From contig NC_052152.1 in NCBI RefSeq assembly GCF_902713615.1, positions 209,801,046-209,865,045 of the forward strand: DNA of 64,000 nucleotides. Direction: 5' to 3'. The position numbers and the translations under genes are program-made. This DNA comes from Scyliorhinus canicula. Taxonomy: Eukaryota. Below are positions 1-61,739 of the stretch, piece by piece. Numbering within the stretch: position 1 is the first letter of the stretch; each line of letters opens with the position of its first letter. Under the pieces are notes generated by a model. It did not search any database. It was not told where the DNA came from and saw only the letters and a program-made list of their open reading frames with translations.

Positions 1-328
1 CGTGTTACAGCACCTGTACAGAAACAGTCAGCACGCGTGTTACAGCACCTGTACAGAAACAATCAGCACGCGTGTTACAGTACCTGCACAGTAAACAGTC
101 AGCACGCGTGTTACAGCACCTCCACAGAAACTGTCAGCACGTGTTACAGTACCTGGTACAGAAACTGTCAGCACGCGTGTTACAGCACCTGTACAGAAAC
201 AGTCAGCACGCGTGTTACAGCACCTGTACAGAAACAGTCAGCACGCATGTTACAGCACCTGATACAGAAACAGTCAGCACGCGTGTTACAGCACCTGTAC
301 AGAAACAGTCAGCACGCGTGTTACAGCA
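1..328 (-). repeat. 35-bp minisatellite (about 9 copies, runs off the window) made of an ERGIC3 splice acceptor plus exon start
   Basis: Minus-strand unit cgtgctgactgtttctgtacag|GTGCTGTAACACG. Confidence 0.9.
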
Positions 329-654
329 GATAATCACAAGGACAGTGCACCATATTTGCAATAACAGACGGGAGTCTCTGCAGGTCAGTCGCCAGCTGGA
401 ATGGACAAACTTTGGGAGTTTCTCCAAACCGTGTGGAGTACATTCTGGAACATTACCCTGGAACACTCTGGAACATTACTCGGGAACACGCTGGAACATT
501 ACTCGGGAACATTACTCCGAGGATCACTCTGCATCTGTCTTCACAAAGGAAGTAACAGATGTGGTTGGCCAACATACAGGGTTGGTGCTGTATATTTGGA
601 TTCACAAAAGGAATTTGATAGACTTATGTGGAAGATCAAAGCACATAGGACTAG

Positions 655-935
655 CACGAGCAGTATGGTGGCACAGTGGTTAGCACTGCTGCCTCAACGT
701 GCCAGGGATCTGGATTCAATACCAGCCTCGTGTGACTGTGCAGAGTCTGCAAGTTCTCCCCGTGTCTGCGTGGGTTTCCTCTGGTTTCCTCCCACAGTCC
801 GAAGATGTGCAGATTAGATGGGGCTGTGGGAACAGGGTGGGGGATGGGCTGAGGTGGTATGCTCTTTCAGAGGGTTGGTGCAGACACGATGGGCCCAATG
901 GCCTCCTTCCAATGGCACTGTAGGGATTCTATGGA
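655..935 (+). mobile_element. tRNA-derived V-SINE/HE1-type SINE
   Basis: A/B boxes, ttctccccgtgtctgcgtgggtttcctc core, CR1-like tail. Confidence 0.85.
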
Positions 936-1456
936 TTAATTGGACAAGGGTAACTTGGAACAAAAAAAGAGATAGGATCACGGTGAACAAATATTTATCT
1001 GCCTTGTGGAATGCATGTAGTAGGTCCAAAGGTCAGTATTAGGATTGTTGTTTTGTGATATATAAATGATATAGGAAATAGGGAGCACAGCACAGGGAAC
1101 ACAGCACAGGGAACAATACTAAACTTTGCCCTGCAGTAAATAGTGAGGAGAATAATTGCAGACTTCAGGGGACTTTTACAGTCTGTTAAGTGGGCAGACT
1201 GGGTAAAGTATAATGTGGATGAGTTTGACGTGATGTACTTGAGGAGAAATAATCTGGTGTTGGTCAGGTAGGCACGAGATGATTATAGATTTTTAAAAAC
1301 CTAGTTGCTCTCTTTGGAAGGAACACTGTTGATCTTTCTGATGTCTTCCATGGGTCACCTGACCAGAAATCCCAGTAGTCTGGGTGACCATTTGTGCAAG
1401 AGCTGCATCTGGCTGGAGCAACTCGAGCTCGGGGTTTTGGAGCCAGGGGGGCATTA

Positions 1457-4260
1457 TAACAAAAGTACAGCACAGGAACAGGCCCTTCGGCCCTCCAAGC
1501 CCGTGCTGCCCGTCTAAACTAAAATCTTCTACACTTCCGGGGTCCGTATCCCAATATTCCCATCCTATTCATGTATTTGTCAAGATGCCCCTTAAATGTC
1601 ACTATCGTCCCTGCTTCCACCACCTCCTCCGGCAGCGAGTTCCAGGCACCCATTACCCTCGGTGTAAAAAAACTTGCCTCGTACATCTCCTCTAAACCTT
1701 GCCCCTCACACCGTAAACCTATGAACACTATACTCCAAGTGTGGCCTAACTAAGGTTCTATACAGCTGCAACATGACTTGCCAATTCTTCTACTCAATGC
1801 CCCGGCCAATAAAGGCAAGCATGCCGTCTGCCTTCTTGACTACCTTCTCCACCTGTGTAACCCCTTTCAGTGACCTGTGGGCCTATACACCTAGATCTCT
1901 CTGACTGTCAATACTCTTGAGGGTTCTACCATTCACTGTATATTCCCTATCTGTATTAGACCTTCCAAATACATTACCTCACATTTGTCCAGATTAAACT
2001 CCATCTGCCATCTCTCCGCCCAAGTCTCCAAACGATCTAAATCCTGCTGTATCCTCTGACAGTCCTCATCGCTATCCGCAATTCCACCAACCTTTGTGTC
2101 GTCTGCAAACTTACTAATCAGACCATCAGTTACATTTTCCTCCAAATCATTTATATATACTACGAACAGCAAAGGTCCCAGCACTGATCCCTGCGGAACA
2201 CCACTAGTCACAGCCCTCCAATTAGAAAAGCACCCTTCCATTGCTACTCTCTGCCTTCTATGAGCTAACCAGTTCTGTATCCACCTTGCCAGCTCACCTC
2301 TGATCCCGTGTGACTTTCCCGTCTGTACCAGTCTGCCATGAGACCTTGTCAAAGGCCTTACTGAAGTCCATAGAGACAACATCCACTGCCCTACCTGCAT
2401 CAATCATCTTTGTGATCTCCTCGAAAAAGTCCATCAAGTTAGTGAGACACGACCTCCCCTTCACAAAACCATGCTGCCTCTCACTAATACGTCCATTTGC
2501 TTCCAAATGGGAAAGATCCTGTTTCTTAAGTAGGTTCCCTACCATAGACGCAAGGTTCGCCAGCCTGTAGTTCCCTGGATTATCCTTGCTACCCTTCTTA
2601 AACAAAGGAACAACATTGGCTATTCTCCAGTCCTCCGGGACATCACCTGAAGACAGTGAGGATCCAAAGATTTCTGTCAAGACCTCAGCAATTTCCTCTC
2701 TAGTTTCCTTCAGTATTCTGGGGTAGATCCCATCAGGCCCTGGGGACTTATCTACCGTAATATTTTTCAAGACGCCCAACACCTCGTCTTTTTGGATCTC
2801 AATGTGACCCATCTATCTACACACCCCGCTCCAGACTCAACATCCACCAATTCCTTCTCTTTGGTGAATACTGATGCAAAGTACTCATTTAGTACCTCTC
2901 CCATTTGCTCTGGCTCCACACATAGATTCCCTCCCCTGTCCTTCAGTGGGCCAACCCTTTCCCTGGCTACCCTCTTGCTTTTTATGTACGTGTAAAAAGC
3001 CTTGGGATTTTCCTTAACCCTATTTTCCAACGACTTTTCGTGACCCCTTCTAGCCCTCCTGACTCCTTGCTTAAGTTCCTTCCTACTTTCCTTATATTGC
3101 ACACAGGCTTCGTCTGTTCCCAGCCTTCTAGCCCTGACAAATGCCTCCTTTTTCCTTTTGACGTGGCCTACAATATCTCTCGTTATCCAAGGTTCCCGAA
3201 ATTTGCCGTATTTATCCTTCTTCCGCACAGGAACATGCCGATCCTGAATTCCTTTCAACTGACATTTGAAAGCCTCCCACATGTCAGATGTTGATTTACC
3301 CTCAAACATCTGCCCCCAATCTAGGTTCTTCAGTTCCTGCCTAATATTGTTATAATTAGCCTTCCCCCAATTTAGCACATTCACCCTAGGACCATTCTTA
3401 TCCTTGTCCACCAGCACTTTAAAACTTACTGAATTGTGGTCACTGTTCCCGAAATGCTCCCCGACTGAAACTTCTACCACCTGGCCAAGCTCATTCCCCA
3501 ATACCAGGTCCAGTACAGCCCCTTCCCTAGTTGGACTGTCTACATATTGTTTTAAGAAGCCCTCCTGGATGCTCCTTACAAACTCTGCCCTGTCCAAGCC
3601 CCTCGCACTAAGTGAGTCCCAGTCAATATTGGGGATGTTGAAGTCTCCCATCACAACAACCCTGTTGCTTTTACTCCTTTCCAAAATCTGTCTACCTATC
3701 TGCTCCTCTATCTCCCGCTGGCTGTTGGGAGGCCTGTAGTAAACCCCCAACATTGTGACTGCACCCTTCTTATTCCTGATCTCTACTCACATAGCCTCGC
3801 TGCCCTCTGAGGGGTCCTCCCGCAGTACAGCTGTGATATTCTCCCTAACCAGTAGCGCAACTCTGCCGCCCCTTTTACATCCCCCTCTATCCCGCCTGAA
3901 ACATCTAAATCCTGGAATGTTTAGCTGCCAATCCTGTCCTTCCCCAACCTGGTCTCTGTAATGGCAACAACATCATAGTTCCAAGTACTAATCCAAGCTC
4001 TAAGTTCATCTGCCTTACCCGTAATGCTTCTTGCATTAAAACATGTGCACTTCAGGCCACCAGACCCGCTGTGTTCAGCATCATCTCCCTGTCTGCTCTG
4101 CCTCACAGCCATACTGGCCCTATTCCCTAATTCTCCCTCAATGCTTTCACCTTCTGACCTATTGCTCCGGTACCCACCCCCCTGCCATACTAGTTTAAAC
4201 CCTCCCGTGTGACACTAGCAAACCTCACGGCCAGGATATTTATGCCTCTCCAGTTTAGAT
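1457..4260 (-). mobile_element. CR1-type LINE (endonuclease + RT), frameshifted and internally deleted
   Basis: ORFs 3921-4112 (FNARSI), 2767-3753 (GVYYRPP, GDFN, SDH), 2294-2812 (KSPGPDG, DFSKAFD), 1933-2403 ([15 protein letters not shown]), plus 3' tail. Confidence 0.93.
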
Positions 4261-4326
4261 GGTCCCTTTGCGAGGTTGAGGGGCGTTTGGATAGTACTTT
4301 CAGGGCAGGGTCACCCTGCAGCCCGA

Positions 4327-6347
4327 GGGAGATCAGGCAGAGAGGGAATGGGAGATCAGGCAGAGGGAGAATGGGAGATCAGGCAGAGAGGGAATGGGAG
4401 ATCAGGCAGAGAGGCAATGGGAGATCAGGCAGAGAGGGAATGGGAGATCAGGCAGAGAGGGAATGGGAGATCAGGCAGAGAGGGAATGGGTGATCAGGCA
4501 GAAAGGGAATGAGAGATCACGCAGAGAGGGAATGGGAGATCAGGCAGAGAGGGAATGGGAGATCAGGCAGAGAGGGAATGGGAGATCAGGCAGAGAGGGA
4601 ATGGGAGATCAGGCAGAGAGGGAATGGGAGATCAGGCAGAGAGGGAATGGGAGATCAGGCAGAGAGGGAATGGGAGATCAGGCAGAGAGGGAACGGGAGA
4701 TCAGGCAGAGAGGGAACGGGAGATCAGGCAGAGAGGGAATGGGAGATCAGGCAGAGAGGGAATGGGAGATCAGGCAGAGAGGGAATGGGAGATCAGGCAG
4801 AGAGGGAATGGGAGATCAGGCAGAGAGGGAATGGGAGATCAGGCAGAGCGGGAAAGGGAGATCAGGCAGAGAGGGAATGGGTGATCAGGCAGAAAGGGAA
4901 TGAGAGATCACGCAGAGAGGGAATGGGAAATCAGGCAGAGAGGGAATGGGAGATCAGGCAGAGAGGGAATGGGAGATCAGGCAGAGAGGGAATGGGAGAT
5001 CAGGCAGAGAGGGAATGGGAGATCAGGCAGAGAGGGAATGGGAGATCAGGCAGAGAGGGAATGGGAGATCAGGCAGAGAGGGAATGAGAGATCAGGCAGA
5101 GAGGGAATGGGTGATCAGGCAGAGAGGGAATGGGAGATCAGGCAGAGAGGGAATGGGTGATCGAGCAGAGAGGGAATGGGAGATCAGGCAGAGAGGGAAT
5201 GGGAGATCAGGCAGAGAGGGAATGGGTGATCGAGCAGAGAGGGAATGGGTGATCGAGCAGAGGGGGAATGGGTGATCAGGCAGAGAGGGAATGGGAGATC
5301 AGGCAGAGAGGGAATGGGAGATCAGGCAGAGAGGGAATGGGAGATCAGGCAGAGAGGGAATGGGAGATCAGGCAGAGAGGGAATGGGTGATCAGGCAGAG
5401 AGGGAATGGGAGATCAGGCAGAGAGGGAATGGGAGATCAGGCAGAGAGGGAATGGGAGATCAGGCAGAGAGGGAATGGGTGATCGAGCAGAGAGGGAATG
5501 GGTGATCGAGCAGAGAGGGAATGGGTGATCGAGCAGAGAGGGAATGGGAGATCAGGCAGAGAGGGAATGGGTGATCAGGCAGAGAGGGAATGGGAGATCA
5601 GGCAGAGAGGGAATGGGTGATCAGGCAGAGAGGGAATGGGTGATCAGGCAGAGAGGGAATGGGTGATCAGGCAGAGAGGGAATGGGAGATCAGGCAGAGA
5701 GGGAATGGGAGATCAGGCAGAGAGGGAATGGGAGATCAGGCAGAGAGGGAATGGGAGATCAGGCAGAGGGAATGGGTGATCAGGCAGAGAGGGAATGGGA
5801 GATCAGGCAGAGAGGGAATGGGAGATCAGGCAGAGAGGGAATGGGTGATCAGGCAGAGAGGGAATGGGTGATCAGGCAGAGAGGGAATGGGTGATCAGGC
5901 AGAGAGGGAATGGGAGATCAGGCAGAGAGGGAATGGGAGATCAGGCAGAGAGGGAATGGGAGATCAGGCAGAGAGGGAATGGGAGATCAGGCAGAGGGAA
6001 TGGGTGATCAGGCAGAGAGGGAATGGGAGATCAGGCAGAGAGGGAATGGGAGATCAGGCAGAGAGGGAATGGGAGATCAGGCAGAGAGGGAATGGGAGAT
6101 CAGGCAGAGAGGGAATGGGAGATCAGGCAGAGAGGGAATGGGAGATCAGGCAAAGAGGGAATGGGAGATCAGGCAGAGAGGGAATGGGAGATCAGGCAGA
6201 GAGGGAATGGGAGATCAGGCAGAGGGAATGGGAGATCAGGCAGAGAGGGAATGGGAGATCAGGCAGAGGGAATGGGAGATCAGGCAGAGAGGGAATGGGA
6301 GATCAGGCAGAGAGGGAATGGGAGATCAGGCAGAGAGGGAATGGGTG
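4327..6347 (+). repeat. 23-bp minisatellite (gggagatcaggcagagagggaat) inside a CR1 ORF1 relic
   Basis: Tandem units run directly into AEREWVTARLRKGERQVVRESP. Confidence 0.95.
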
Positions 6348-6419
6348 ACTGCCAGACTGAGGAAGGGGGAGAGGCAGGTTGTGAGGGAATCCCCCGAGGG
6401 ACAGTCCCTCTGTGGAGTG

Positions 6420-8410
6420 GGGTCTGGAACACTCCTTGTTCTGGTCCTACTCACACCCTCTCCCACAATTCCGTTACACCGGTGACTATATCACAGCCGC
6501 TTCGCGCTCTCGTCTGAACCTGGAAAAGTTATTCAATTTCCACCCCCCTCTCTCACCTTCACATCGTCCATCTCCGACACTCCCTTCCCACCCCCCTCTC
6601 TCACCTTCACATCGTCCATCTCCGACACTCCCTTCCCGGACCTCTCTCTCCTTCACATCGTCCATCTCCGACACTCCCTTCCCTGACCTCTCTCTCCTTC
6701 ACATCGTCCATCTCCGACACTCCCTTCCCTGACCTCTCTCTCCTTCACATCGTCCATCTCCGACACTCCCTTCCCTGACCGCTCACCTTCACATCGTCCA
6801 TCTCCGACACTCCCTTCCCTGACCTCTCTCTCCTTCACATCGTCCATCTCCGACACTCCCTTCCCTGACCGCTCACCTTCACATCGTCCATCTCCGACAC
6901 TCCCTTCCCTGACCTCTCTCTCCTTCACATCGTCCATCTCAGACACTCCCTTCCCTGACCCCTCTCTCCTTCACATCGTCCATCTCTGACACTCCCTTCC
7001 CTGACCCCTCTCTCCTTCACATCGTCCATCTCTGACACTCCCTTCCCTGACCCCTCTCTCCTTCACATCGTCCATCTCCGACACTCCCTTCCCTGACCTC
7101 TCTCTCCTTCACATCGTCCATCTCTGACACTCCCTTCCCTGACCCCTCTCTCCTTCACATCGTCCATCTCCGACACTCCCTTCCCTGACCCCTCTCTCCT
7201 TCACATCGTCCATCTCTGACACTCCCTTCCCTGACCCCTCTCTCCTTCACATCGTCCATCTCTGACACTCCCTTCCCTGACCTCTCTCACCTTCACATCG
7301 TCCATCTCCGACACTCCCTTCCCTGACCGCTCACCTTCACATCGTCCATCTCCAACAGTCCCTTCCCTGACCGCTCACCTTCACATCGTCCATCTCCGAC
7401 ACTCCCTTCCCTGACCTCTCTCCTTCACATCGTCCATCTCCGACACTCCCTTCCCTGACCTCTCTCTCCTTCACATCGTCCATCTCCGACACTCCCTTCC
7501 CTGATCTCTCTCACCTTCACATCGTCCATCTCCGACACTCCCTTCCCTGACCTCTCTCCTTCACATCGTCCATCTCTGACACTCCCTTCCCTGACCTCTC
7601 TCTCCTTCACATCGTCCATCTCCGACACTCCCTTCCCTGACCTCTCTCTCCTTCACATCGTCCATCTCCGACACTCCCTTCCCTGACCTCTGTCTCCATA
7701 TCTGGTGACAGACTGACCACCAATATCCATTACAAACCCACCGACTCCCACAGCTACATCGATTACAGCTCAACCCATTTCTGCAAGGACTCCATCCAAT
7801 TCTCCCAGTTTCTCAGTCTCCACCACATCGGTTCCGATGATGCCACCTTTCAAACCGTGCTTTAGACATGTCTGCCTTTTCCTTAACCAAAGTTCACCTT
7901 TCACCCCATCAGTCTCCAAATTCAAAAGATCATCCACTGGAACTTCCATGATGCCACCACAAAACACATCTTCCCCTCACCTCCCCTGCCAACATTCTGT
8001 CGGGATTGCTCCGTCCATCACCCCCAACCCTTCATCCCCATCCCAAGCAATCGCTGACGGTGCAACACCCTTCACTTCTTCCCTCCTCACTGGCCTGAGG
8101 CGCAAACACTCCTTTCTGGTGAAGCAGTGATTCACTTGCATCTCCTATAATTTGGTCGACTGTATTTGCTGCTCCCAATGGGGTTTCTTCAACACTGGGA
8201 GACAAAATGAAGACAGGGTGACCACTTTCCAGGACACCTTCACTCCGTCAGCAAGCACAGCCCCAACCTTTTCTGTTGCTGGTCATTTCAACTGAGCGTC
8301 TTGCTCTCGCGTCCACATGTCCATCCTCAGCCTGCTGCAATGTTCCAGTGAAGCCCAGCGCAAACTGGAATGACAGCACCTCATCTTCCAATTAGGCACG
8401 TTACATTCTT
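6420..8410 (+). mobile_element. Penelope-like element relic (RT + GIY-YIG endonuclease)
   Basis: EHSLF..LPQFRYTGDYI (degenerate YIDD), FNFHP, LSVSISGDRLTTNIHYKPTDSHSY, HFN, KLE*QHLIFQLGTL. Confidence 0.8.
6545..7690 (+). repeat. 44-46-bp minisatellite inside a Penelope RT relic
   Basis: Unit tccatctccgacactcccttccctgacctctctctccttcacatcg. Confidence 0.95.
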
Positions 8411-8461
8411 CCGAACGCAACTTGCAGATAAAACTGTGTCAGAGGGTGGGAGGTCTTCAAG

Positions 8462-10538
8462 GAGGAGATAGCGAGAGTACAAGGCCAGAGGAGACAGCCA
8501 GAGTACAGGGGCAGAGGAGACAGCGAGAGTACAGGGCCAGAGGAGACAGCGAGAGTACAGGGCCAGAGGAGACAGCCAGAGTACAGGGGCAGAGGAGACA
8601 GCCAGAGTACAGGGCCAGAGGAGACAGCGAGAGTACAGGGCCAGAGGAGACAGCCAGAGTACAGGGGCAGAGGAGACAGCGAGAGTACAGGGCCAGAGGA
8701 GACAGCAAGAGTACAGGGCCAGAAGAGACAGCGAGAGTACAGGGCCAGAGGAGACAGCGAGAGTACAGGGCCAGAGGAGACAGCCAGAGTACAGGGCCAG
8801 AGGAGACAGCGAGAGTACAGGGCCAGAGGAGACAGCGAGAGTACAGGGCCAGAGGAGACAGCGAGAGTACAGGGCCAGAGGAGACAGCGAGAGTACGAGG
8901 CCAGAGGAGACAGCGAGAGTACGAGGCCAGAGGAGACAGCGAGAGTACGAGGCCAGAGGAGACAGCGAGAGTACAGGGCCAGAGGAGACAGCGAGAGTAC
9001 AGGGCCAGAGGAGACAGCGAGAGTAAAAGGCCAGAGGAGACAGCAAGAGTACAGGGCCAGAGGAGACAGCGAGAGTACGAGGCCAGAGGAGACAGCGAGA
9101 GTACGCGGCCAGAGGAGACAGCGAGAGTACGCGGCCAGAGGAGACAGCGAGAGTACGCGGCCAGAGGAGACAGCGAGAGTACGCGGCCAGAGGAGACAGC
9201 GAGAGTACGCGGCCAGAGGAGACAGCGAGAGTACGCGGCCAGAGGATACCAGCGAGAGTACAGGGCCAGAGGAGACAGCGAGAGTACAGGGCCAGAGGAT
9301 GACAGCGAGAGGTACAGGGCCAGAGGAGACAGCGAGAGTACAGGGCCAGAGGAGACAGCGAGAGTACAGGGCCAGAGGAGACAGCGAGAGTACAGGGCCA
9401 GAGGAGACAGCGAGAGTACAGGGCCAGAGGAGACAGCGAGAGTACAGGGCCAGAGGAGACAGCGAGAGCACAGGGCCAGAGGAGACAGCGAGAGCACAGG
9501 GCCAGAGGAGACAGCGAGAATACAGGGCCAGAGGAGACAGCGAGAGTACAAGGCCAGAGGAGACAGCGAGAGTACGAGGCCAGAGGAGACAGCGAGAGTA
9601 CAGGGCCAGAGGAGACAGCGAGAGTACAGGGCCAGAGGAGACAGCGAGAGTACAGGGCCAGAGGAGACAGCGAGAGTACGAGGCCAGAGGAGACAGCGAG
9701 AGTACGCGGCCAGAGGAGACAGCGAGAGTACGCGGCCAGAGGAGACAGCGAGAGTACGCGGCCAGAGGAGACAGCGAGAGTACGCGGCCAGAGGAGACAG
9801 CGAGAGTACGCGGCCAGAGGAGACAGCGAGAGTACGCGGCCAGAGGAGACAACGAGAGTACAGGGCCAGAGGAGACAGCGAGAGTACGAGGCCAGAGGAG
9901 ACAGCGAGAGTACAGGGCCAGAGGAGACAGCGAGAGTACAGGGCCAGAGGAGACAGCGAGAGTACAGGGCCAGAGGAGACAGCGAGAGTACAGGGCCAGA
10001 GGAGACAGCGAGAGTACAGGGCCAGAGGAGACAGCGAGAGTACAGGGCCAGAGGAGACAGCGAGAGTACAGGGCCAGAAGAGACAGCGAGAGTACAGGGC
10101 CAGAGGAGACAGCGAGAGTACAGGGCCAGAGGAGACAGCGAGAGTACAGGGCCAGAGGAGACAGCGAGAGTACAGGGCCAGAGGAGACAGCGAGAGTACA
10201 GGGCCAGAGGAGACAGCGAGAGTACAGGGCCAGAGGAGACAGCGAGAGTACAGGGCCAGAGGAGACAGCGAGAGTACAGGGCCAGAGGAGACAGCGAGAG
10301 TACAGGGCCAGAAGAGACAGCGAGAGTACAGGGCCAGAGGAGACAGCGAGAGTACAGGGCCAGAGGAGACAGCGAGAGTACAGGGCCAGAGGAGACAGCG
10401 AGAGTACAGGGCCAGAGGAGACAGCGAGAGTACAGGGCCAGAGGAGACAACGAGAGTACAGGGCCAGAGGAGACAGCGACAGTACAGGGCCAGAGGAGAC
10501 AACGAGAGTACAGGGCCAGAGGAGACAGCGAGGGTACA
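8462..10538 (+). repeat. 26-bp minisatellite (cagcgagagtacagggccagaggaga)
   Basis: About 80 tandem copies; begins in CR1-like text LADKTVSEGWEVFKEEIARVQGQ. Confidence 0.95.
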
Positions 10539-10542
10539 ATTT

Positions 10543-10848
10543 AAGAACATACAGTGCAGAAGGAGGCCACTCGCCCATCGAGTCTGCACCGACCCACTTC
10601 AGCCCTCACTCCCACCCTATCCCCATAACCTCTCCCAACCTTTTTGGTCACTAAGGGCAATTTCTCATGGCCAATCCACCTAACCTGCACGTCGTTGGAC
10701 TGTGGGAGGAAACCGGAGCTCCCGGAGGAAACCCACGCAGACATGGGGAGAACTTGCAGACTTCACATAGACAGTGACCCAAGCCGGAATCGAACCTGGG
10801 ACCCTGATGCTGTAAAGCAACAGTGCTAACCACCATGCTACTGTGCTA
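10543..10848 (-). mobile_element. V-SINE/HE1-type SINE
   Basis: Reverse complement of the same consensus. Confidence 0.9.
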
Positions 10849-10849
10849 C

Positions 10850-13010
10850 CCATGGTAAATTGGACAAGAAATTAAGGTCCCATGTGATGCAAGGAAAAGT
10901 GTCATAGAGGAACCAGAATGAGCCGAGAGGCAGGAAGCAGAGGGCGAAGGTAGAGGGATTTTCCTGTGACAGGAAATCTGTTTCCAGTGGGATTCGCAGG
11001 GCTCGATGCTGGGCTCCTTCTTATTTGTGCTGCACATTAATCATCTGCACTTAAATGTAAGAGGGAGGAGCACAGACTGCGGGGGGATAGCCACAGACTG
11101 CGGGGGGGATAGCCACAGACTGCGGGGGGGATAGCCACAGACTGCGGGGGGGATAGCCACAGACTGCGGGGGGGATAGCCACAGACTGCGGGGGGATAGC
11201 CACAGACTGCGGGGGGATAGCCACAGACTGCGGGGGGATAGCCACAGACTGCGGGGGGATAGCCACAGACTGCGGGGGGATAGCCACAGACTGCGGGGGG
11301 ATAGCCACAGACTGCGGGGGGATAGCCACAGACTGCGGGGGGATAGCCACAGACTGCGGGGGGATAGCCACAGACTGCGGGGGGGATAGCCACAGACAGA
11401 GGGATAGCCACAGACTGCGGGGGGATAGCCACAGACTGCGGGATAGCCACAGACTGCGGGGGGATAGCCACAGACTGCGGGGGGATAGCCACAGACTGCG
11501 GGGGGGATAGCCACAGACTGCGGGGGGGATAGCCACAGACTGCGGGGGGATAGCCACAGACTGCGGGGGGATAGCCACAGACTGCGGGGGGGATAGCCAC
11601 AGACTGCGGGATAGCCACAGACTGCGGGGGGATAGCCACAGACTGCGGGATAGCCACAGACTGCGGGATAGCCACAGACTGCGGGATAGCCACAGACTGC
11701 GGGGGGATAGCCACAGACTGCGGGATAGCCACAGACTGCGGGGGGATAGCCACAGACTGTGGGGGGATAGCCACAGACTGCGGGGGGATAGCCACAGACT
11801 GCGGGGGGGATAGCCACAGACTGCGGGGGGGATAGCCACAGACTGCGGGGGGATAGCCACAGACTGCGGGATAGCCACAGACTGCGGGGGGATAGCCACA
11901 GACTGCGGGGGGATAGCCACAGACTGCGGGGGGATAGCCACAGACTGTGGGGGGATAGCCACAGACTGCGGGATAGCCACAGACTGCGGGATAGCCACAG
12001 ATTGCGGGGGGATAGCCACAGACTGCGGGGTAGCCACAGACTGCGGGGGGATAGCCACAGACTGCGGGATAGCCACAGACTGTGGGGGGATAGCCACAGA
12101 CTGTGGGGGGATAGCCACAGACTGCGGGATAGCCACAGACTGCGGGGGGATAGCCACAGACTGCGGGATAGCCACAGACTGCGGGGGGATAGCCACAGAC
12201 TGCGGGATAGCCACAGACTGCGGGGGGATAGCCACAGACTGCGGAGTAGCCACAGACTGCGGGGGGATAGCCACAGACTGCGGGATAGCCACAGACTGCG
12301 GGATAGCCACAGACTGCGGGATAGCCACAGACTGCGGGATAGCCACAGACTGCGGGATAGCCACAGACTGCGGGGGGATAGCCACAGACTGCGGGGGGAT
12401 AGCCACAGACTGCGGGGGGATAGCCACAGACTGCGGGATAGCCACAGACTGCGGGGGGATAGCCACAGACTGCGGGATAGCCACAGACTGCGGGATAGCC
12501 ACAGACTGCGGGGGGATAGCCACAGACTGCGGGGGGATAGCCACAGACTGCGGGGGGATAGCCACAGACTGCGGGGGGGATAGCCACAGACTGCGGGGGG
12601 ATAGCCACAGACTGCGGGGGGATAGCCACAGACTGCGGGATAGCCACAGACTGCGGGATAGCCACAGACTGCGGGATAGCCACAGACTGCGGGATAGCCA
12701 CAGACTGCGGGAGGGTAGCCACAGACTGCGGGGGGATAGCCACAGACTGCGGGATAGCCACAGACTGCGGGATAGCCACAGACTGCGGGATAGCCACAGA
12801 CTGCGGGGGGATAGCCACAGACTGCGGGGGGATAGCCACAGACTGCGGGGGGATAGCCACAGACTGTGGGGGGATATGAATGGACTGGTCAGGTGGACAG
12901 AGCAGTGGAAAATGGAATTCTATCCGAAAAAGTGTGAGGTAATGCACTTGGGGAGGACAGCAAGGTCAAGGATTACACTATGAATGGTAGGACTGTGGAA
13001 AGTATCGGAG
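10850..13010 (+). mobile_element. Degenerate CR1 RT fragment hosting the 11070-12876 array
   Basis: HG..GK..RKQR..SG..QGS.LG motifs before the array; WKMEF..KKCEVMHLG after it. Confidence 0.75.
11070..12876 (+). repeat. 18-22-bp minisatellite ((g)n-atagccacagactgc) inside a CR1 RT relic
   Basis: Variable G-run; exits into RLWGDMNGLVRWTEQWKMEFYPKKCEVMHLGR. Confidence 0.95.
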
Positions 13011-13485
13011 TGAATATCTCAGTTGTTCCCATCCTGTGTACCAGGGCACAGGAATGTGTAAATGTCCGGCAGTCTGCTGCAGAATGGCTCGGTGTCTGCA
13101 GTCCTGGCAGCAGGGACTGGAAAGGAGAGTAGGCCCTGGTCTGGGAGTCCAGCTTCGGAATCCCTGCGGGTATGAGAGGCAGGTACATCAAATAAAAATA
13201 AACCATGACCCAGATTGGTCTCCCACCTCCAAATGGTTCAAACAATTGATCCAAGTGCGTGGAGGCCACAGAGTCAAACACACACACAAATGTTTGTCTT
13301 TACCCAGGAGCCCCTTCACTGGTCAGTGTTGACCGTGAGGGAAATGGTGGGACTCCGGTTTGAAGCCAGTACTGCTCCTCAGGTTTCGGTTAACCTGCCA
13401 CATGAAATTCCAACATCTCCGCTCACATTTCACATTTTCATCCAACAGTTCAGCAATGGGATATTTTTTTTAAAAGCATCATAAT

Positions 13486-13700
13486 GGGCAGCACGATGGC
13501 GCAGTGGTTAGCACTGCTGCTTCACAGCAACGGGGACCCGGCTCAATCCCGGCTCTGGGTCACTGTCCGTGTGGAGTTTGCACATTCTCCCCGTGTCTGC
13601 GTGGGTCTCACCCCCACAACCCAAAGATGTGCAGGGTCGGTGGATTGGACATATCTTTTTATTAAAACAGTAAAAAAGAATTGGGCACTGAAATTTATTT
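13486..13700 (+). mobile_element. V-SINE, short subfamily
   Basis: gggcagcacg..tggttagcac head and V core. Confidence 0.85.
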
Positions 13701-13714
13701 TAGAAAAGTAATTC

Positions 13715-14382
13715 CACGGGTTTCTAGGCCGTTTCCACCTCATTCTACTGAACTCCAGCGAATACAATCCGAACCAATTCAATCTCTCCTCATACGTCAG
13801 TCCCGCCATCCCTGGAATCAGTCTGGTAAACCTTTGCTCCCACTGCAGCAAGAACATCCTTCCTCAGAAAAGACGACTAAAACTGCACACACTCGTCCTG
13901 GTGTGGCCTCACCAACGCCCTGTATAATTGCAGCAAGACATCGCTACTCCTGCACTCGACTCCTCTCGCCATGAAGGCTAACATACAGTGGTTAGCACTG
14001 CTGCCTCATGGTGCTGAGAACCCGGCTTCGATCTCAGCTCCGGATCTCTGTCTGTGTGGAGTTTGCACATTCTCCCTGTGCCTGAGTAGGCGCACCCCCA
14101 CAACCCAAAGGTGTGCAGGGTAGCTGAATTGGCCACGCTAAATTGCTCCTTAATTGGAAAAGATTTTAAAAGGCCAACATACCATTTGCCTTCTTTACCG
14201 CCTGTTGTAGCTGCATGTTTGTGACTGGTGGACAAGGACACCCAGGTCTCGTTGCACATTCCCCTCTCCTAATTTATGGCCATTCAGATAATAGTCTGCC
14301 TTCTTGTTTTTGCTACCAAAGTGGATAACCTCACATTTCTCCACATTATACTGCATCTGCCATTCATTTGCCCACTCACTCA
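13715..14382 (-). mobile_element. CR1 RT fragment interrupted by a SINE (13987-14169) with 13-bp TSD
   Basis: ORFs 14195-14383 and 13543-13857; aaggc(t/c)aacatac duplicated at 13974-13986 and 14170-14182. Confidence 0.85.
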
Positions 14383-14601
14383 CAGCAAAAACACAGCAAA
14401 GCGCAGTCCTGGTCTCATATCAAGGACGAGAGGACGTTAACCAGGAATGAGAGTTTGTCAGTTAATCCTCCTCGCCAGCCTGAGTGTAGTTCACCCCAGG
14501 GTTTGGACATAAGATCCCCCTTGACCCCAGCATGAAGAGGATTTCTTTCACTCACTCACTCTCTCTTCCTCAAGTCACAAGAAGCGATCAGTAACACTCA
14601 C

Positions 14602-14692
14602 TTCATGTCCTCGGACTCTGCCCCATAGCAGCTCTCGCACCGGTCTGGGTCCAGTCTCGTGGAATTGAAAACTTCTTCCTGTTTTCCCAATA
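14602..14692 (-). CDS. ERGIC3: ER-Golgi intermediate compartment protein 3, internal exon
   Basis: ctttctctctgtttcag acceptor, AA|gtgagt donor; 91 nt, phase 1 to 2; reads LGKQEEVFNSTRLDPDRCESCYGAESEDM(K), matching the ERGIC3/Erv46 motif LDPDRCESCYGAE..DxK-CCNTC. Confidence 0.92.
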
Positions 14693-14779
14693 CTGAAACA
14701 GAGAGAAAGAACATCATATATGGAGAGGGGTTGGGTGGGGTGCGAGCCAGACAGGAGTGAGATAGACAGAGAGAAAATC

Positions 14780-15395
14780 AACACACGGAACATTGACCCA
14801 GAGAGACAGAACACACGGAACATTGACCCAGAGAGACAGAACACACGGAACATTGACCCAGAGAGACAGAACACACGGAACATGGACCCAGAGAGACAGA
14901 ACACACGGAACATGGACCCAGAGAGACAGAACACACGGAACATTGACCCAGAGAGACAGAACACACGGAACATTGACCCAGAGAGACAGAACACACGGAA
15001 CATGGACCCAGAGAGACAGAACACACGGAACATTGACCCAGAGAGACAGAACACACGGAACATGGACCCAGAGAGACAGAACACACGGAACATTGACCCA
15101 GAGAGACAGAACACACGGAACATGGACCCAGAGAGACAGAACACACGGAACATGGACCCAGAGAGACAGAACACACGGAACATTGACCCAGAGAGACAGA
15201 ACACACGGAACATGGACCCAGAGAGACAGAACACACGGAACATGGACCCAGAGAGACAGAACACACGGAACATGGACCCAGAGAGACAGAACACACGGAA
15301 CATTGACCCAGAGAGACAGAACACACGGAACATGGACCCAGAGAGACAGAACATGGACCCAGAGAAACAGAACACACGAAACATGGACCCAGAGA
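14780..15395 (+). repeat. 30-bp minisatellite (acacacggaacat(t/g)gacccagagagacaga) in an ERGIC3 intron
   Basis: About 20 near-perfect copies with a single T/G polymorphic site. Confidence 0.95.
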
Positions 15396-15925
15396 AAAAA
15401 TCAGTTTCTGCCTCATGATCCATGTATTGATTCACTGGCTGGGTTTATATTCCGGGTGGCTCTGTCCATTAGTGCATAGAAAGCTGTTGCCATTAGATAA
15501 TGGCACAGGGACTGAGAGATACAGATTTATGAATTTGGGCAAGAGATGCTGCTGGGGTGTGGGATGAATTCTTTAACACAGCGGCTGTAATAACCAGGAA
15601 CTCTCTGCCTGCAAGGACAATAGAAGTTGAGACGAATGATGTCAGAAAGAAATTGCATGGGCACTTGGATGTAAATAAACCTGCAGTGATACAGGGATCG
15701 AACGAGCAAATGGAACCGACCCTCTAAGAGCTCTCCACCAGGCCCACCTCCCCACAACCCCGTAACATCTGAGATGGCAACAAAGAGTCTAACATGAGTT
15801 TGAGAGTCAAACAAAACGAATATTTACACAGCACCAGCACTTCGCTGCTGCTTTTCACTCCAGCCACACCTAACTGGCTGGCTCTAATTATACAACAGAA
15901 GGGCTCAACGATTATCACGCCCTCT

Positions 15926-16089
15926 GGGCGGCATTGTAGCACAGTGGTTAGCTCTATTGCTTCACAGCTCCAGGGTCCCAGGTTCGATTCCCGGCTTGGG
16001 TCATTGTCTGTGCAGAGTTTGCACGTTCTCCCTTTGTCTACATGGGTTTCCTCCGGGTCCCGAAAGACGTGCTGTTAGGTGAATTGGAC
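15926..16089 (+). mobile_element. V-SINE truncated by the gap
   Basis: Head and core present up to the N run. Confidence 0.85.
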
Positions 16090-16589
16090 NNNNNNNNNNN
16101 NNNNNNNNNNNNNNNNNNNNNNNNNNNNNNNNNNNNNNNNNNNNNNNNNNNNNNNNNNNNNNNNNNNNNNNNNNNNNNNNNNNNNNNNNNNNNNNNNNNN
16201 NNNNNNNNNNNNNNNNNNNNNNNNNNNNNNNNNNNNNNNNNNNNNNNNNNNNNNNNNNNNNNNNNNNNNNNNNNNNNNNNNNNNNNNNNNNNNNNNNNNN
16301 NNNNNNNNNNNNNNNNNNNNNNNNNNNNNNNNNNNNNNNNNNNNNNNNNNNNNNNNNNNNNNNNNNNNNNNNNNNNNNNNNNNNNNNNNNNNNNNNNNNN
16401 NNNNNNNNNNNNNNNNNNNNNNNNNNNNNNNNNNNNNNNNNNNNNNNNNNNNNNNNNNNNNNNNNNNNNNNNNNNNNNNNNNNNNNNNNNNNNNNNNNNN
16501 NNNNNNNNNNNNNNNNNNNNNNNNNNNNNNNNNNNNNNNNNNNNNNNNNNNNNNNNNNNNNNNNNNNNNNNNNNNNNNNNNNNNNNNNN
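16090..16589. other. Assembly gap (500 N)
   Basis: Exactly 500 N, a round placeholder size; truncates a SINE on the left and a minisatellite on the right. Confidence 0.99.
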
Positions 16590-16808
16590 CCCTCCCGCAG
16601 TGACCTCCCCCTCCCCCTCCCGCAGTGACCTCCCCCTTTCCCCCCCGCAGTGACCTCTCTCCCCCCCTCCCGCAGTGACCTCCCCCCCCCCTCCCGCAGT
16701 GACCTCCCCCCCCCTCCCGCAGTGACCTCCCCCCCCCCTCCCGCAGTGACCTCCCCCCCCCTCCCGCAGTGACCCCCCCCCCCCCCCCCCCCCTCCCCCG
16801 CAGTGACC
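16590..16808 (+). repeat. C-rich ~21-bp minisatellite (ccccctcccgcagtgacctc)
   Basis: Tandem copies at the contig edge; G-runs on the minus strand. Confidence 0.9.
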
Positions 16809-17566
16809 ATCCTCTCTCAGTGTTGTTGGTTATTTGTATCCTCCAAGTGCACAGAGGCCAGCTCACTCGGGATGAGGCACTGAGCAGGTACGGCTCAGTT
16901 GTAAACACTGAGCACTGGAACATTGGGGACATTCTTGTGTTTGGATTAAGATTTATTCTCTGCTCATTCACAGAACAGGCCATTCAGCCCATTGAGCCCG
17001 TCCTGCCATTCACCATCACGGTTCATCAATATCTTAACTCCATCCACCTCATCATTCCAAATCCTTTTTTATCCTCGTCTAGAAATACACCATCAATCTC
17101 AGATATAAAATGAATTAAACGAGCATCAATTGCATTTAGTTGCCAAGAGTTTCATACTGTTACCACCCTTTGTTTGAAGAATTATTTCCTAACTTCTCTA
17201 CTGAACAGATTAACTCTGATTTTAAGGTTATTTTCTTTGCACCTACCCATCAAATCCATTCAAAATTCCAAAAACCTCAATCAAATCAACTCTTCAACCG
17301 TTGATATTACTGGGATACTAGCCGAGTTCATGCAATCTCCCCTCATCAGCTTTTCTTGGGAATCCTGGTAACATTCTGGTCAACTGCGGTGCCCTCCTTC
17401 CGAGGCCATTATCTCATTCTCAGCTGTAGAGCCCAGGCTGTACCAGTGCTCCAGCTGTGGATCGAGCAGGGTTTTGAACGCTTTCAATGGAATGGATCAA
17501 AGAGAGCACCAGAGCAAAAAGGTCAGAACGTGCAGCCACATCAGGAATACAAGATCCAAGTCTTAC

Positions 17567-54544: not shown

Positions 54545-54732
54545 CTGGCATAATCGAGTGCAGATAAGTACCCCCCGTGATTCCAGGGGTAGCTGGGCGA
54601 ATGGAGTTCCAGATCCGCGTACACAGAGTGATGCAGTGTCAAGGCAAGCGCACTGCCCCCCGCAGCAAGGACACCTAGTGTAGATAACGCTATCTTCTTC
54701 CCACGGGACAGGTTAGCAAAGGACATCCTGGC
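54545..54732 (-). CDS. CYC1: Cytochrome c1 exon 2
   Basis: [62 protein letters not shown](S): hydrophobic sorting signal and mature N-terminus; ttgcag acceptor, AG|gtga donor; 188 nt, phase 0 to 2. Confidence 0.96.
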
Positions 54733-59736: not shown

Positions 59737-60390
59737 GAGGGTTAGAGGGTCCCAGAGGAGGTAGGGTTAGAGGGTCCCAGAGGAGGGGGGGTGAGGGGGT
59801 CCAGGGGGGGGGGGGGTCAGAGGGTGAGAGGGTCGGGGAGGGGGGGGTCTGAGGGTGTCTGGTGGTGAGGGGGTCCAGGGGTGAGTGTCCGGGGATGAGG
59901 GGGTCCGGGGGGGGGGGGGGGGGGGGGGTGAGGGGGTCCGGGGGGGTGAGGGGGTCGGGGGGGGGGGGGTGAGGGGGTCGGGGGGGGGGGGGTGAGGGGG
60001 TCGGGGGGGGGGGGCGAGGGGGGTCGGGGGGGGGGGGGTGAGGGGGGGGGGTGAGGGGGTCGGGGGGGGGGGGTGGAGAGAGTCCGGGTGAGGGGGGGGG
60101 TGAGGGGGGGGGTGAGGGGGTCCGGGGGGGGGGGGGTGGAGAGAGTCCGGGTGAGGGGGGGGGTGAGGGGGGGGGTGAGGGGGGGGGGGGGGGGGGGGAG
60201 GGGGGGGGGGGGGGAGGGGGGTGAGGGGGGGGGGTGGGGGGGGGGGTGTGGGGGGGGGGGGGGGGGGGGTGGGGGGTGAGGGGGTCCGGGGGGGGGGGGG
60301 TGGAGAGAGTCCGGGGGGGGGGGGAAGAAGAGAGTCCGGGGGTCCCGGGGAGGGGGGTCGGGGGTGAGAGGGTCCGACGGGGGGGGAGGG
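59737..60390 (+). repeat. G-rich low-complexity repeat (gtgagggggtcc(g)n) in CYC1 intron 1
   Basis: Long G runs; probable G-quadruplex former; homopolymer lengths unreliable. Confidence 0.85.
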
Positions 60391-60571
60391 TGTTCGGGCC
60401 GCGATTCCGGGGCTCCGCCCGCCTTCCGCAGCCGCTCCGCCACTGGGCCCCGGGGTGACCTTGAGGGGAGGGAGGCTCTGGCAGTGATTTCCTGGCCTCG
60501 CTGTGGGTCTGCAGCCCGGGCCCGGCCGGGACTCAGCTGCCAGCGCCGCCCAGCCGCTCCGCCGCCCTCAC

Positions 60572-60652
60572 CTTGCACAAGTGGAAGGTTTTCTGCCGCG
60601 TGTGGAGGAGGCGTCCGCTCCCCGCCGCCGCTGCCGCCCGCAACGCCGCCAT
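60572..60652 (-). CDS. CYC1: Cytochrome c1 exon 1 (N-terminal mitochondrial presequence)
   Basis: AAG ATG GCG GCG context; encodes MAALRAAAAAGSGRLLHTRQKTFHLCK (81 nt, Arg/Ala-rich, no acidic residues); donor AAG|gtgagg; phase 0 matches exon 2; lies in a CpG-rich region. Confidence 0.85.
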
Positions 60653-60664
60653 CTTGAGGAACTC

Positions 60665-60960
60665 GCCCTCACTCCCACTGTGCACCGCGCCGCCATCCTG
60701 ACTGCCCGCCCTCACTCCCACTGTGCACCGCGCCGCCATCCTGACTGCCCGCCCTCACTCCCACTGTGCACCGCGCCGCCATCCTGACTGCCCGCCCTTA
60801 CTCCCACTGTGCACCGCGCCGCCATCCTGACTGCCCGCCCTCACTCCCACTGTGCACCGCGCCGCCATCCTGACTGCCCGCCCTCACTCCCACTGTGCAC
60901 CGCGCCGCCATCCTGACTGCCCGCCCTCACTCCCACTGTGCACGGCGCTGCCATCCTGAC
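60665..60960 (-). repeat. 43-bp minisatellite, 7 copies, immediately upstream of the CYC1 ATG
   Basis: Minus-strand unit gggcagtcaggATGGCGGCGCGGTGCACAGTGGGAgtgagggc; ATGs at 60696, 60739, 60782, 60825, 60868, 60911, 60954. Confidence 0.95.
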
Positions 60961-61739
60961 CCTCTGACAGTGCGGCACTCCCTCAGTACTGACCCTCTGA
61001 CAGTGCAGCACTCCCTCAGTACTGACCCTCTGACAGTGCGGCACTCCCTCAGTACTGACCCTCTGACAGTGCGGCACTCCCTCAGTACTGACCCTCTGAC
61101 AGTGCGGCTCTCCCTCAGTACTGACCCTCTGACAGTGCAGCACTCCCTCAGTACTGACCCTCTGACAGTGCGGCACTCCCTCAGTACTGACCCTCTGACA
61201 GTGCGGCTCTCCCTCAGTACTGACCCCCTGACAGTGCGGCACTCCCTCAGTACTGACCCTCTGACAGTGCGGCACTCCCTCAGTACTGACCCTCTGACAG
61301 TGCAGCACTCCCTCAGTACTGACCCTCTGACAGTGCAGCACTCCCTCAGTACTGACCCTCTGACAGTGCGGCACTCCCTCAGTACTGACCCTCTGACAGT
61401 GCGGCACTCCCTCAGTACTGACCCTCTGACAGTGCGGCACTCCCTCAGTACTGACCCTCTGACAGTGCAGCACTCCCTCAGTACTGACCCTCTGACAGTG
61501 CGGCACTCCCTCAGTACTGACCCTCTGACAGTGCAGCACTCCCTCAGTACTGACCCTCTGACAGTGCGGCACTCCCTCAGTACTGACCCTCTGGCAGTGC
61601 AGCACTCCCTCAGTACTGACCCTCTGACAGTGCGGCTCTCCCTCAGTACTGACCCTCTGACAGTGCGGCACTCCCTCAGTACTGACCCTCTGACAGTGCA
61701 GCACTCCCTCAGTACTGACCCTCTGACAGTGCGGCACTC
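60957..61739 (+). repeat. 33-bp minisatellite (cactccctcagtactgaccctctgacagtgcgg), about 24 copies
   Basis: Tandem units; resembles the gtactgagggagtgctgcactgtc core of Deu-domain SINEs (recalled similarity, not aligned). Confidence 0.9.

What the first reader, a model, noticed from the sequence alone, without database searches (positions are those of the whole stretch)
60665..60960. Seven miniature exon-1 mimics directly upstream of the CYC1 start codon
Seen: real exon 1 is aagATGGCGGCG...TGCAAG|gtgagggcgg. The 43-bp unit is aggATGGCGGCGCGGTGCACAGTGGGA|gtgagggcgg: the same first 9 coding nt and the same 10 nt as the real donor, exactly 8 codons after the ATG (phase 0, compatible with exon 2); the two end copies differ slightly. 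The ATG at 60739 is in frame and open into CYC1 (+29 aa); the one at 60696 is out of frame. Most units also carry a GC box and a near-YY1 site (GCCATCCT versus GCCATCTT). Inference: the array may be a collapsed, amplified duplicate of exon 1. It could act as a VNTR promoter, a uORF array, or alternative micro first exons (MAARCTVG) lacking most of the matrix-targeting sequence.
Basis: partly seen in the sequence, partly recalled or inferred. Interest (0 to 1): 0.75.

Follow-up and report, generated by a model that had tools for sequence, protein, structure and literature searches.

The report
Tandemly amplified CYC1 core-promoter cassette
The seven "mini exon 1" copies upstream of the catshark cytochrome c1 gene are tandem copies of its 43-base core promoter, which contains the start codon, and RNA data put nearly all transcript starts after the last copy, so they are promoter DNA and not extra exons.

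Summary
A 43-bp unit is repeated 6.9 times at 60664-60960, on the minus strand, directly upstream of the CYC1 ATG at 60652. Each unit has ATGGCGGCG, then GTGAGGGCGG 24 nt later.

The proposed origin, a collapsed duplicate of exon 1, is not supported. The unit is the conserved CYC1 core-promoter cassette. It has three parts:
- an 18-bp ZNF143-type site (SBS1-like);
- a GC box;
- a TISU/YY1 element that includes the start codon.

In five cartilaginous fishes the SBS-like site starts exactly 37 nt before the real ATG, and all five carry extra upstream cassette copies. A sturgeon and a lamprey have a single TISU-type start and no such site. The 10-nt match to the donor is only weakly significant and is absent in skate and chimaera.

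RNA places the dominant 5' ends 15-41 nt upstream of the ATG, inside the last cassette:
- Repeat words have depth 2-4, against 122-575 for the mRNA contig.
- No splicing from a mimic donor was seen in four runs.

The best reading is a recently expanded promoter minisatellite that multiplies activator sites, with rare upstream initiation. Its effect on expression and any copy-number variation were not tested. I rate it a new variant of a known kind, of moderate interest.

The parts
60664..60960 (-). 43-bp tandem array, 6.9 copies. Each copy is the core-promoter cassette: SBS1-like site, GC box and TISU-like ATG.
   Evidence: TRF; pattern search; motif scan.
60645..60656 (-). Perfect TISU consensus CAAGATGGCGGC containing the real CYC1 start codon (ATG 60652-60650).
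   Evidence: TISU definition from PMC2518114. The MAALR start is conserved in P0212, P0213, P0189 and P0016.
60672..60689 (-). Proximal SBS1-like (ZNF143-type) site CGCGGTGCACAGTGGGAG, starting 37 nt before the ATG. Its last G is the G of the proximal mimic donor.
   Evidence: 16/16 informative positions and 15/18 identical to the SBS1 probe of PMC3627581. The site has the same -37 position in 5 species.
60715..60947 (-). Six further SBS1-like sites, starting at 60732, 60775, 60818, 60861, 60904 and 60947. Each lies 36 nt upstream of a unit ATG (60696 to 60911). An orphan TISU-like ATGGCAGCG at 60954 abuts the 33-mer array.
   Evidence: Sites scoring at least 14/16 occur 7 times in the whole window, all of them here.
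60572..60652 (-). Coding part of CYC1 exon 1 (27 codons). The donor GT is at 60571-60570, within GTGAGGGCGG.
   Evidence: RNA contigs are spliced at 60571 to exon 2.
60667..60693 (-). Zone of observed mRNA 5' ends, 15 to 41 nt upstream of the ATG and inside the last cassette.
   Evidence: The X2 contig (depth 575) ends at 60667. The X1 contig (depth 122) ends at 60693, which is the 31-mer uniqueness limit. Raw reads of X22 and X23 fade to 0 above 60672.
54547..54732 (-). CYC1 exon 2 (starts GCCAGGATG...), the splice partner of exon 1.
   Evidence: the loose end.
60956..61739 (-). 33-bp satellite array of 23.8 copies bounding the cassette array. It is CpG-poor, unrelated to the 43-mer, and a dispersed repeat with very high RNA depth on both strands.

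Best explanation
The array is a recent head-to-tail amplification of the CYC1 core-promoter cassette.

The cassette fills the whole 43-bp unit:
- an 18-bp ZNF143-type SBS1-like site;
- a GC box (GAGGGCGGGC);
- a TISU/YY1 element whose ATG is the start codon.

Because TISU overlaps the start codon, every copy carries ATGGCGGCG. Because the SBS end plus the GC box reads GTGAGGGCGG, every copy also looks like a donor.

What is shown:
- The cassette architecture, with the SBS-like site exactly 37 nt before the ATG, is conserved across cartilaginous fishes.
- All five examined carry extra upstream copies. The catshark has the most, seven cassettes in all, and the most uniform.
- The dominant mRNA 5' ends lie within the last cassette.
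- Exon 1 is spliced normally to exon 2.

What is inferred:
- The upstream copies act as a cluster of extra ZNF143, Sp1-type and YY1 sites in the proximal promoter. This would be a promoter minisatellite that sustains or tunes CYC1 transcription.
- Each copy keeps a weak ability to initiate. That would give rare transcripts with an out-of-frame uORF or a 29-aa extension.
- The duplication probably arose by slippage or unequal exchange between GGCGGCG-type microhomologies flanking the cassette, in a region very prone to minisatellites.
For: Anatomy:
- The real ATG lies in a 12/12 TISU consensus.
- Six units keep the TISU core ATGGCGGC. By PMC2518114 these positions, 5-12, are the ones needed for YY1 binding and transcription.
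- Seven SBS1-like sites score 15-16 of 16 informative positions and are 14-15/18 identical to a validated SBS1 probe.
- Sites scoring at least 14/16 occur nowhere else in the window.

Conservation:
- The SBS-like site starts at -37 in Scyliorhinus, Chiloscyllium, Rhincodon, Leucoraja and Callorhinchus.
- It is followed by GGGAGTGAGGGC and then CAAGATGGCGGCG.
- Extra upstream copies number 6 plus a partial copy, 2, 2, 2-3 and 1 in those five species.
- The distal copies of Chiloscyllium and Rhincodon are 88% alike. That is closer than either is to its own proximal copy (80% and 71%).
- Sturgeon and lamprey have one TISU-type start and no SBS-like site.

RNA:
- The mRNA contigs of X1 and X2 end at -41 and -15 and are spliced at the real donor.
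- The repeat unitig has depth 2.2 and 4, against 122 and 575 for the mRNA contigs.
- Raw reads are zero over 60673-60945.
- Only 3 RNA-type runs hold array words, while several runs of the same studies hold none.
- Skate RNA contigs carry template-switch oligo tails that mark 5' ends at -7 and -2.

Context:
- The array lies in the CpG island, with CpG o/e 0.83-0.87. The adjacent satellite has 0.2-0.3.
- Mouse Cyc1 falls on ZFP143 depletion (PMC11687419).
- Minisatellites cover about a quarter of the window.
Against: - No binding or expression data exist for the catshark. The ZNF143, YY1 and Sp1 assignments rest on motif matches.
- The unit's TISU differs from the consensus at one position (CAGG for CAAG).
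- Its SBS differs from the probe at 3 of 18 positions.
- RNA depth at exon 1 in the raw-read runs is only 3-9x and 3'-biased, so a minor upstream TSS share of up to about 10% cannot be excluded from those runs alone.
- Contig depths are means over whole contigs.
- The 98% identity of the copies fits a young, possibly neutral expansion.
- Copy-number polymorphism was not tested.
- NCBI models for Mustelus asterias and S. torazame start at an upstream cassette ATG, so upstream initiation may be more than noise in relatives.
Confidence: 0.72

Rival explanations
1. Same origin, no function. The array is a neutral, recent minisatellite expansion of promoter sequence in a region that makes minisatellites from whatever lies there. 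It has no measurable effect on CYC1 output.
For: About 15 arrays with periods of 21-50 bp fill roughly 26% of the window. The copies are 98-100% identical, so the expansion is young.
Against: Extra cassettes are present in all five cartilaginous fishes and keep their motif cores. One copy appears older than the split between the two orectolobiform families. The array remains CpG-rich, unlike the neighbouring satellite.
Confidence: 0.2
2. The units work at the RNA or protein level, in one of three ways: as alternative micro first exons (MAARCTVG spliced to exon 2), as TISU-driven uORFs, or as an in-frame 29-aa N-terminal extension. Upstream cassettes would fire in particular tissues or conditions.
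For: The frames and the donor arithmetic are correct. A low-depth repeat unitig exists in 3 RNA-type runs. NCBI models for Mustelus X1 (339 aa) and S. torazame (343 aa) begin at an upstream cassette ATG in frame.
Against: No loose end at any mimic donor was listed in 4 runs. The X1 mRNA contig reads through the proximal mimic donor unspliced. Repeat depth is about 1-2% of the mRNA contig depth, summed over about 6 copies. The exonic side of the mimic donor ends in A rather than the consensus G (sequence plus general knowledge).
Confidence: 0.06
3. One reading: the unit is a duplicate of exon 1 plus its donor that lost its middle 57 nt and was then amplified.
For: The unit and exon 1 share 9 nt at the start and 10 nt at the donor, in the same order. 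Two separate 9-mers occur in only 40 of 5000 local shuffles.
Against: The first match is explained by register. The real ATG sits one period (44 nt) after the last unit ATG and is simply the next copy. The unit's middle and its 3' part align with the conserved -37 to -1 promoter stretch of chimaera, skate and sharks, not with the exon body. The donor differs from the promoter element in skate and chimaera. The overall alignment has p=0.09.
Confidence: 0.03

Closest known systems
[quoted passage not shown]
   Same: The real CYC1 start matches the consensus 12/12. The 5'UTR is very short. The gene is a mitochondrial housekeeping gene, a class enriched for TISU. The units keep positions 5-12, which that paper found necessary for YY1 binding and transcription.
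   Different: TISU is described as a single, strictly positioned element downstream of the TSS. Here seven further TISU-type copies stand in tandem upstream of the TSS and are almost never used as starts.
ZNF143/Staf binding site SBS1 in housekeeping and mitochondrial gene promoters (PMC3627581; PMC11687419)
   Same: The 18-bp motif has the TGGGA...TGCA...CGC layout, lies close to the TSS in a CpG island, and often occurs in multiple copies per promoter. Mouse Cyc1 responds to ZFP143 loss.
   Different: Binding is untested in any cartilaginous fish. Here the multiplicity arises from exact tandem duplication of a whole cassette, not from scattered sites.
Promoter or 5'UTR minisatellites (VNTRs) that carry factor sites, such as the TYMS 28-bp repeats just upstream of the ATG or the MAOA uVNTR (recalled from general knowledge, not checked here)
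   Same: These are tandem units of tens of bp next to the start of a gene. Each unit brings a binding site, and copy number is expected to tune output.
   Different: Here the unit is the complete core promoter, start codon included. Polymorphism and a dosage effect have not been shown.
Minisatellite built from the ERGIC3 splice acceptor at 1-328 of the same window (earlier scan note s1-243460)
   Same: It is a local tandem duplication that captured a gene boundary signal and so produced a row of look-alike signals.
   Different: That array copies an intron-exon junction inside a gene. This one copies a promoter cassette that is multiplied in other species as well.

Membership tests
TISU element | Sequence SAASATGGCGGC | tested here: met
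   The real site CAAGATGGCGGC matches 12/12. The units read CAGGATGGCGGC (11/12), and the core at positions 5-12 is intact in 6 units.
TISU element | Lies a few to about 30 nt downstream of the TSS, giving a very short 5'UTR | tested here: met
   Met for the real site. Contig 5' ends are at -15 and -41, and raw reads fade by about -20. The skate orthologue has 5' ends at -7 and -2. Not met for the upstream units, which lie upstream of the bulk of 5' ends.
TISU element | Its ATG is the translation start | tested here: inconclusive
   For the real site this is inferred from the conserved MAALR N-terminus in orthologues. No ribosome or protein data are available. There is no evidence for the unit ATGs.
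TISU element | Bound by YY1 | not testable with these tools
   This needs EMSA or ChIP.
ZNF143 SBS1 site | 18-bp motif (probe TTCCCATTATGCACCGCG, read on the other strand) | tested here: met
   The unit site is 15/18 identical to the probe and matches 16/16 informative positions of the consensus as I recalled it. Such sites occur 7 times in the window, all in the array.
ZNF143 SBS1 site | Occupied by ZNF143 and activating | not testable with these tools
   The only support is indirect. Mouse Cyc1 falls on ZFP143 depletion, and the position is conserved at -37 in 5 species.
Promoter minisatellite / VNTR | Head-to-tail copies with a period of 10-100 bp in the promoter | tested here: met
   The array lies upstream of the main 5' ends and inside the CpG island.
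Promoter minisatellite / VNTR | Copy number varies among individuals and changes expression | not tested
DNA-type runs of two samples hold 0.71 and 0.57 of the array words, which does not settle copy number.
Alternative first exon | Reads that join the unit's donor to exon 2 | tested here: not met
   The only CYC1 loose end listed is at 60571. The contig reads through 60672 unspliced. This covers four runs, and 51 minor loose ends were not shown.
uORF | The upstream ATG is present in the mature mRNA | tested here: not met
   The bulk of mRNA starts downstream of 60696. Repeat words have depth 2-4 against 122-575 for the mRNA contigs.

The most novel reading that the evidence does not exclude
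Cartilaginous fishes may have evolved CYC1 promoters built from several complete, self-sufficient core-promoter cassettes (ZNF143 site, GC box and TISU start codon). The choice of firing cassette would be regulated. Upstream cassettes would then yield N-terminally extended or uORF-burdened CYC1 mRNAs in particular tissues or energy states, and the catshark array would be an expanded version of this switch. It would also be a natural test of why near-identical TISU cassettes stay silent while the last one fires.
Probability: 0.1. Interest if true: 0.6.

Novelty: new variant of a known kind. Interest (0 to 1): 0.4.

Why it matters
The finding resolves an apparent row of decoy first exons into ordinary promoter grammar. 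It also shows how a start codon and a splice-like word can be carried along when a TISU-type core promoter duplicates.

Two points go beyond the ordinary:
- One compact cassette, with the ZNF143-type site fixed 37 nt before the ATG, has been kept across cartilaginous fishes (chimaera, skate and sharks), and it is multiplied in all five examined.
- The catshark carries seven near-identical cassettes, yet almost all transcripts start at the last one. This gives a natural system for asking what fixes the start site in TISU promoters and whether cassette number tunes a respiratory-chain gene.

It is also a caution for annotation. Gene models in two relatives begin at an upstream cassette ATG.

Tried and rejected
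- **Relation of the 43-mer to the adjacent 33-mer satellite.** The best local alignment is 7 nt, with p=0.41 against shuffles. Rejected.
- **Bacterial promoter and terminator scan**. Irrelevant here, and it found nothing.
- **NRF1, ETS/GABP and TATA patterns.** None found near the start.
- **DNA for S. torazame, Mustelus asterias and Mobula birostris.** Their cassette copies are inferred only from the translated N-terminal extensions of the NCBI models.
- **Latimeria and Xenopus.** The products are not on record.
- **Amblyraja.** The model lacks the true exon 1, so it was not used.
- **Full-length catshark CYC1 from RNA assemblies.** A search made to obtain more 5' ends found none.
- **Paper searches.** Searches on shark minisatellites and on the CYC1 promoter gave nothing useful.
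- **Earlier scan notes.** None at this place or by this sequence.
- The N run at 16090-16589 was left as it is.

Full report
**What is there**

The gene lies on the minus strand. Reading that strand, a 43-bp unit is repeated 6.9 times at 60664-60960 with 98% identity.

- The 34-nt core, ATGGCGGCG...GTGAGGGCGG, occurs seven times with at most two mismatches. It occurs nowhere else in the window.
- ATGGCGGCG is otherwise found only at the real start, 60652. GTGAGGGCGG is otherwise found only at the real donor, 60571.

The gene is CYC1:
- Exon 1 is 60652-60572.
- Exon 2 runs from 54732.
- Further exons lie at 46768-46634, 29767-29606 and 17753-17565.
- These exons match the Scyliorhinus canicula protein model P0242.

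**How strong is the exon-1 resemblance?**

I tested it against dinucleotide-preserving shuffles of the local sequence:
- The best local alignment of the unit to exon 1 plus flanks is not significant (p=0.09).
- A shared 10-mer has p=0.04.
- Two separate 9-mers occur in 40 of 5000 shuffles.

One of the two matches is explained by register. The real ATGGCGGCG sits 44 nt after the last unit ATG, so it is simply the next copy of that part of the repeat. Only the donor match is left to explain.

**What the unit is**

The real start codon lies in CAAGATGGCGGC. This is a 12/12 match to the TISU consensus. PMC2518114 describes TISU as follows:
- It is a YY1-binding element found just downstream of the TSS.
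- The genes that carry it have a median 5'UTR of 12 nt.
- It is enriched among mitochondrial genes.
- Positions 5-12 (ATGGCGGC) are required for transcription, YY1 binding and translation.

Six units keep that core.

The next 18 nt of the unit, CGCGGTGCACAGTGGGAG, read on the other strand as a ZNF143/Staf SBS1-type site. They are 15/18 identical to the SBS1 probe used in PMC3627581. Sites of this quality occur seven times in the window, all in the array.

A GC box lies between the two elements. Together the three elements fill all 43 bp. The "micro-exon" is therefore the TISU core plus the SBS, and the "donor" is the last base of the SBS plus the GC box.

**Relatives**

Starting from the exon 2 translation I reached CYC1 proteins of other cartilaginous fishes. 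I then fetched five usable loci.

In Chiloscyllium punctatum, Rhincodon typus, Leucoraja erinacea and Callorhinchus milii, as in the window:
- The SBS-like site starts exactly 37 nt before the real ATG.
- It is followed by GGGAGTGAGGGC (GGGAGTGGGGGC in the chimaera).
- A TISU start comes next.

Every species also has extra upstream cassette copies:

| Species | Extra copies |
|---|---|
| Chiloscyllium | 2 |
| Rhincodon | 2 |
| Leucoraja (skate) | 2-3 |
| Callorhinchus (chimaera) | 1, about 240 nt upstream |

Further points from the comparison:
- The duplication boundaries differ between lineages. The skate copies include the first five or six codons. This points to recurrent duplication or turnover.
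- The distal copies of the two orectolobiform sharks are more alike (88%) than either is to its own proximal copy (80% and 71%). That copy therefore seems older than their split.
- NCBI models for Mustelus asterias and S. torazame begin with N-terminal extensions. These translate two further cassette copies.
- A sturgeon and a lamprey have a single TISU-type start, no SBS-like site and no copies.
- The donor reads GTGAGGCGGG in the skate and GTGAGGCCCG in the chimaera.

The 10-nt identity between donor and promoter element is thus confined to sharks. It is most simply a consensus GTGAGG followed by GC-rich sequence. The unit is an amplified core-promoter cassette and not a collapsed exon 1.

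**RNA evidence**

Two runs kept as assembled contigs are spliced, so they are RNA.

| Measure | X1 | X2 |
|---|---|---|
| mRNA contig length | 1417 nt | 1489 nt |
| Mean depth of mRNA contig | 122 | 575 |
| Upstream end of contig | 60693 (-41) | 60667 (-15) |
| Depth of the 73-nt repeat unitig | 2.2 | 4 |

- Both mRNA contigs cover exon 1 and continue at 60571 into exon 2 sequence.
- The X1 end at 60693 is exactly where 31-mers stop being unique.
- The repeat unitig sums over about six copies.
- Two raw-read oligo-dT runs give 3-9x on exon 1. Depth fades to zero above 60672, and there are no reads over 60673-60945 or in the intron.
- The only CYC1 loose end listed is at the real donor.
- The X1 contig reads through the proximal mimic donor unspliced.
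- An array-only word search found array words in just three RNA-type runs. Several other runs of the same studies had none.
- In the skate, two RNA contigs carry template-switch oligo tails directly before TCCCAAGATGG and AGATGG. These mark capped 5' ends at -7 and -2.

The dominant TSS therefore lies in the last cassette, as expected for a TISU gene. Initiation from the upstream cassettes is of the order of one or two percent.

These data have limits. Exon 1 depth in the raw reads is low and 3'-biased. Contig depths are means over whole contigs. Fifty-one minor loose ends were not displayed.

**Context**

- The array lies inside the CpG island (CpG o/e 0.83-0.87).
- It abuts a CpG-poor 33-bp satellite. 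That satellite is unrelated to the unit (p=0.41) and is a dispersed, highly represented repeat.
- About 15 minisatellite arrays cover roughly a quarter of the window.
- An earlier scan note reports one array built from an ERGIC3 splice acceptor at 1-328.

The region is evidently prone to tandem duplication of whatever lies there.

**Mechanism**

Shown:
- the composition and conservation of the cassette;
- its multiplication in all five cartilaginous fishes examined;
- the position of the main 5' ends;
- normal splicing.

Inferred:
- The extra cassettes act as additional ZNF143, Sp1-type and YY1 sites in the proximal promoter. Mouse Cyc1 is a ZFP143-dependent gene (PMC11687419).
- Each cassette retains weak initiator activity.
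- The duplications arise through the GGCGGCG-type microhomology at both cassette ends.

The main rival is that the expansion is neutral.

**Verdict**

I rate it a new variant of known kinds (a TISU promoter, clustered SBS sites and a promoter minisatellite), of moderate interest.

Noticed in passing
window 1-64000: At least 15 distinct minisatellite arrays with periods of 21-50 bp, some 2-3 kb long, cover roughly a quarter of the window. Most lie inside CYC1 introns, and the gene spans more than 43 kb here, against 7-22 kb in the other cartilaginous fishes fetched.
   Followed up: partly
window 328-17565, including the N run at 16090-16589: The last ~67 residues of CYC1, which include the membrane anchor, were not found by tblastn anywhere in the window. 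The public S. canicula model P0242 is truncated at 246 aa. The missing exons probably fall in the assembly gap. The gap was left untouched.
   Followed up: partly
window 60956-61739: The 33-bp satellite has very high RNA depth on both strands in all four runs, with many variant copies. It is a dispersed, transcribed repeat family of this genome.
   Followed up: no
window 54724-54732; proteins P0233 and P0246: Exon 2 begins GCCAGGATG, with an in-frame ATG. NCBI X2 isoforms in Mustelus and Rhinoraja (277 aa) start at that Met and lack the first 28 residues. With 5'UTRs as short as 2-7 nt in the skate, leaky use of this second ATG is conceivable.
   Followed up: no
L002 12341-12670, L003 16055-16410, L006 22016-22186; window 1-328: ERGIC3 lies directly downstream of CYC1 on the same strand in chimaera, skate and whale shark. 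A salmonid UniRef entry (P0191) even merges the two genes.
   Followed up: partly
L001 2300-2750 and L006 2500-2740: In both orectolobiform sharks a different minisatellite of about 30-36 bp lies about 250 bp upstream of the CYC1 cassettes. This mirrors the satellite that abuts the catshark array.
   Followed up: no
window 59737-60392: Intron 1 starts with about 650 bp of G-rich (C-rich on the gene strand) degenerate 25-63-bp repeats inside the CpG island.
   Followed up: no
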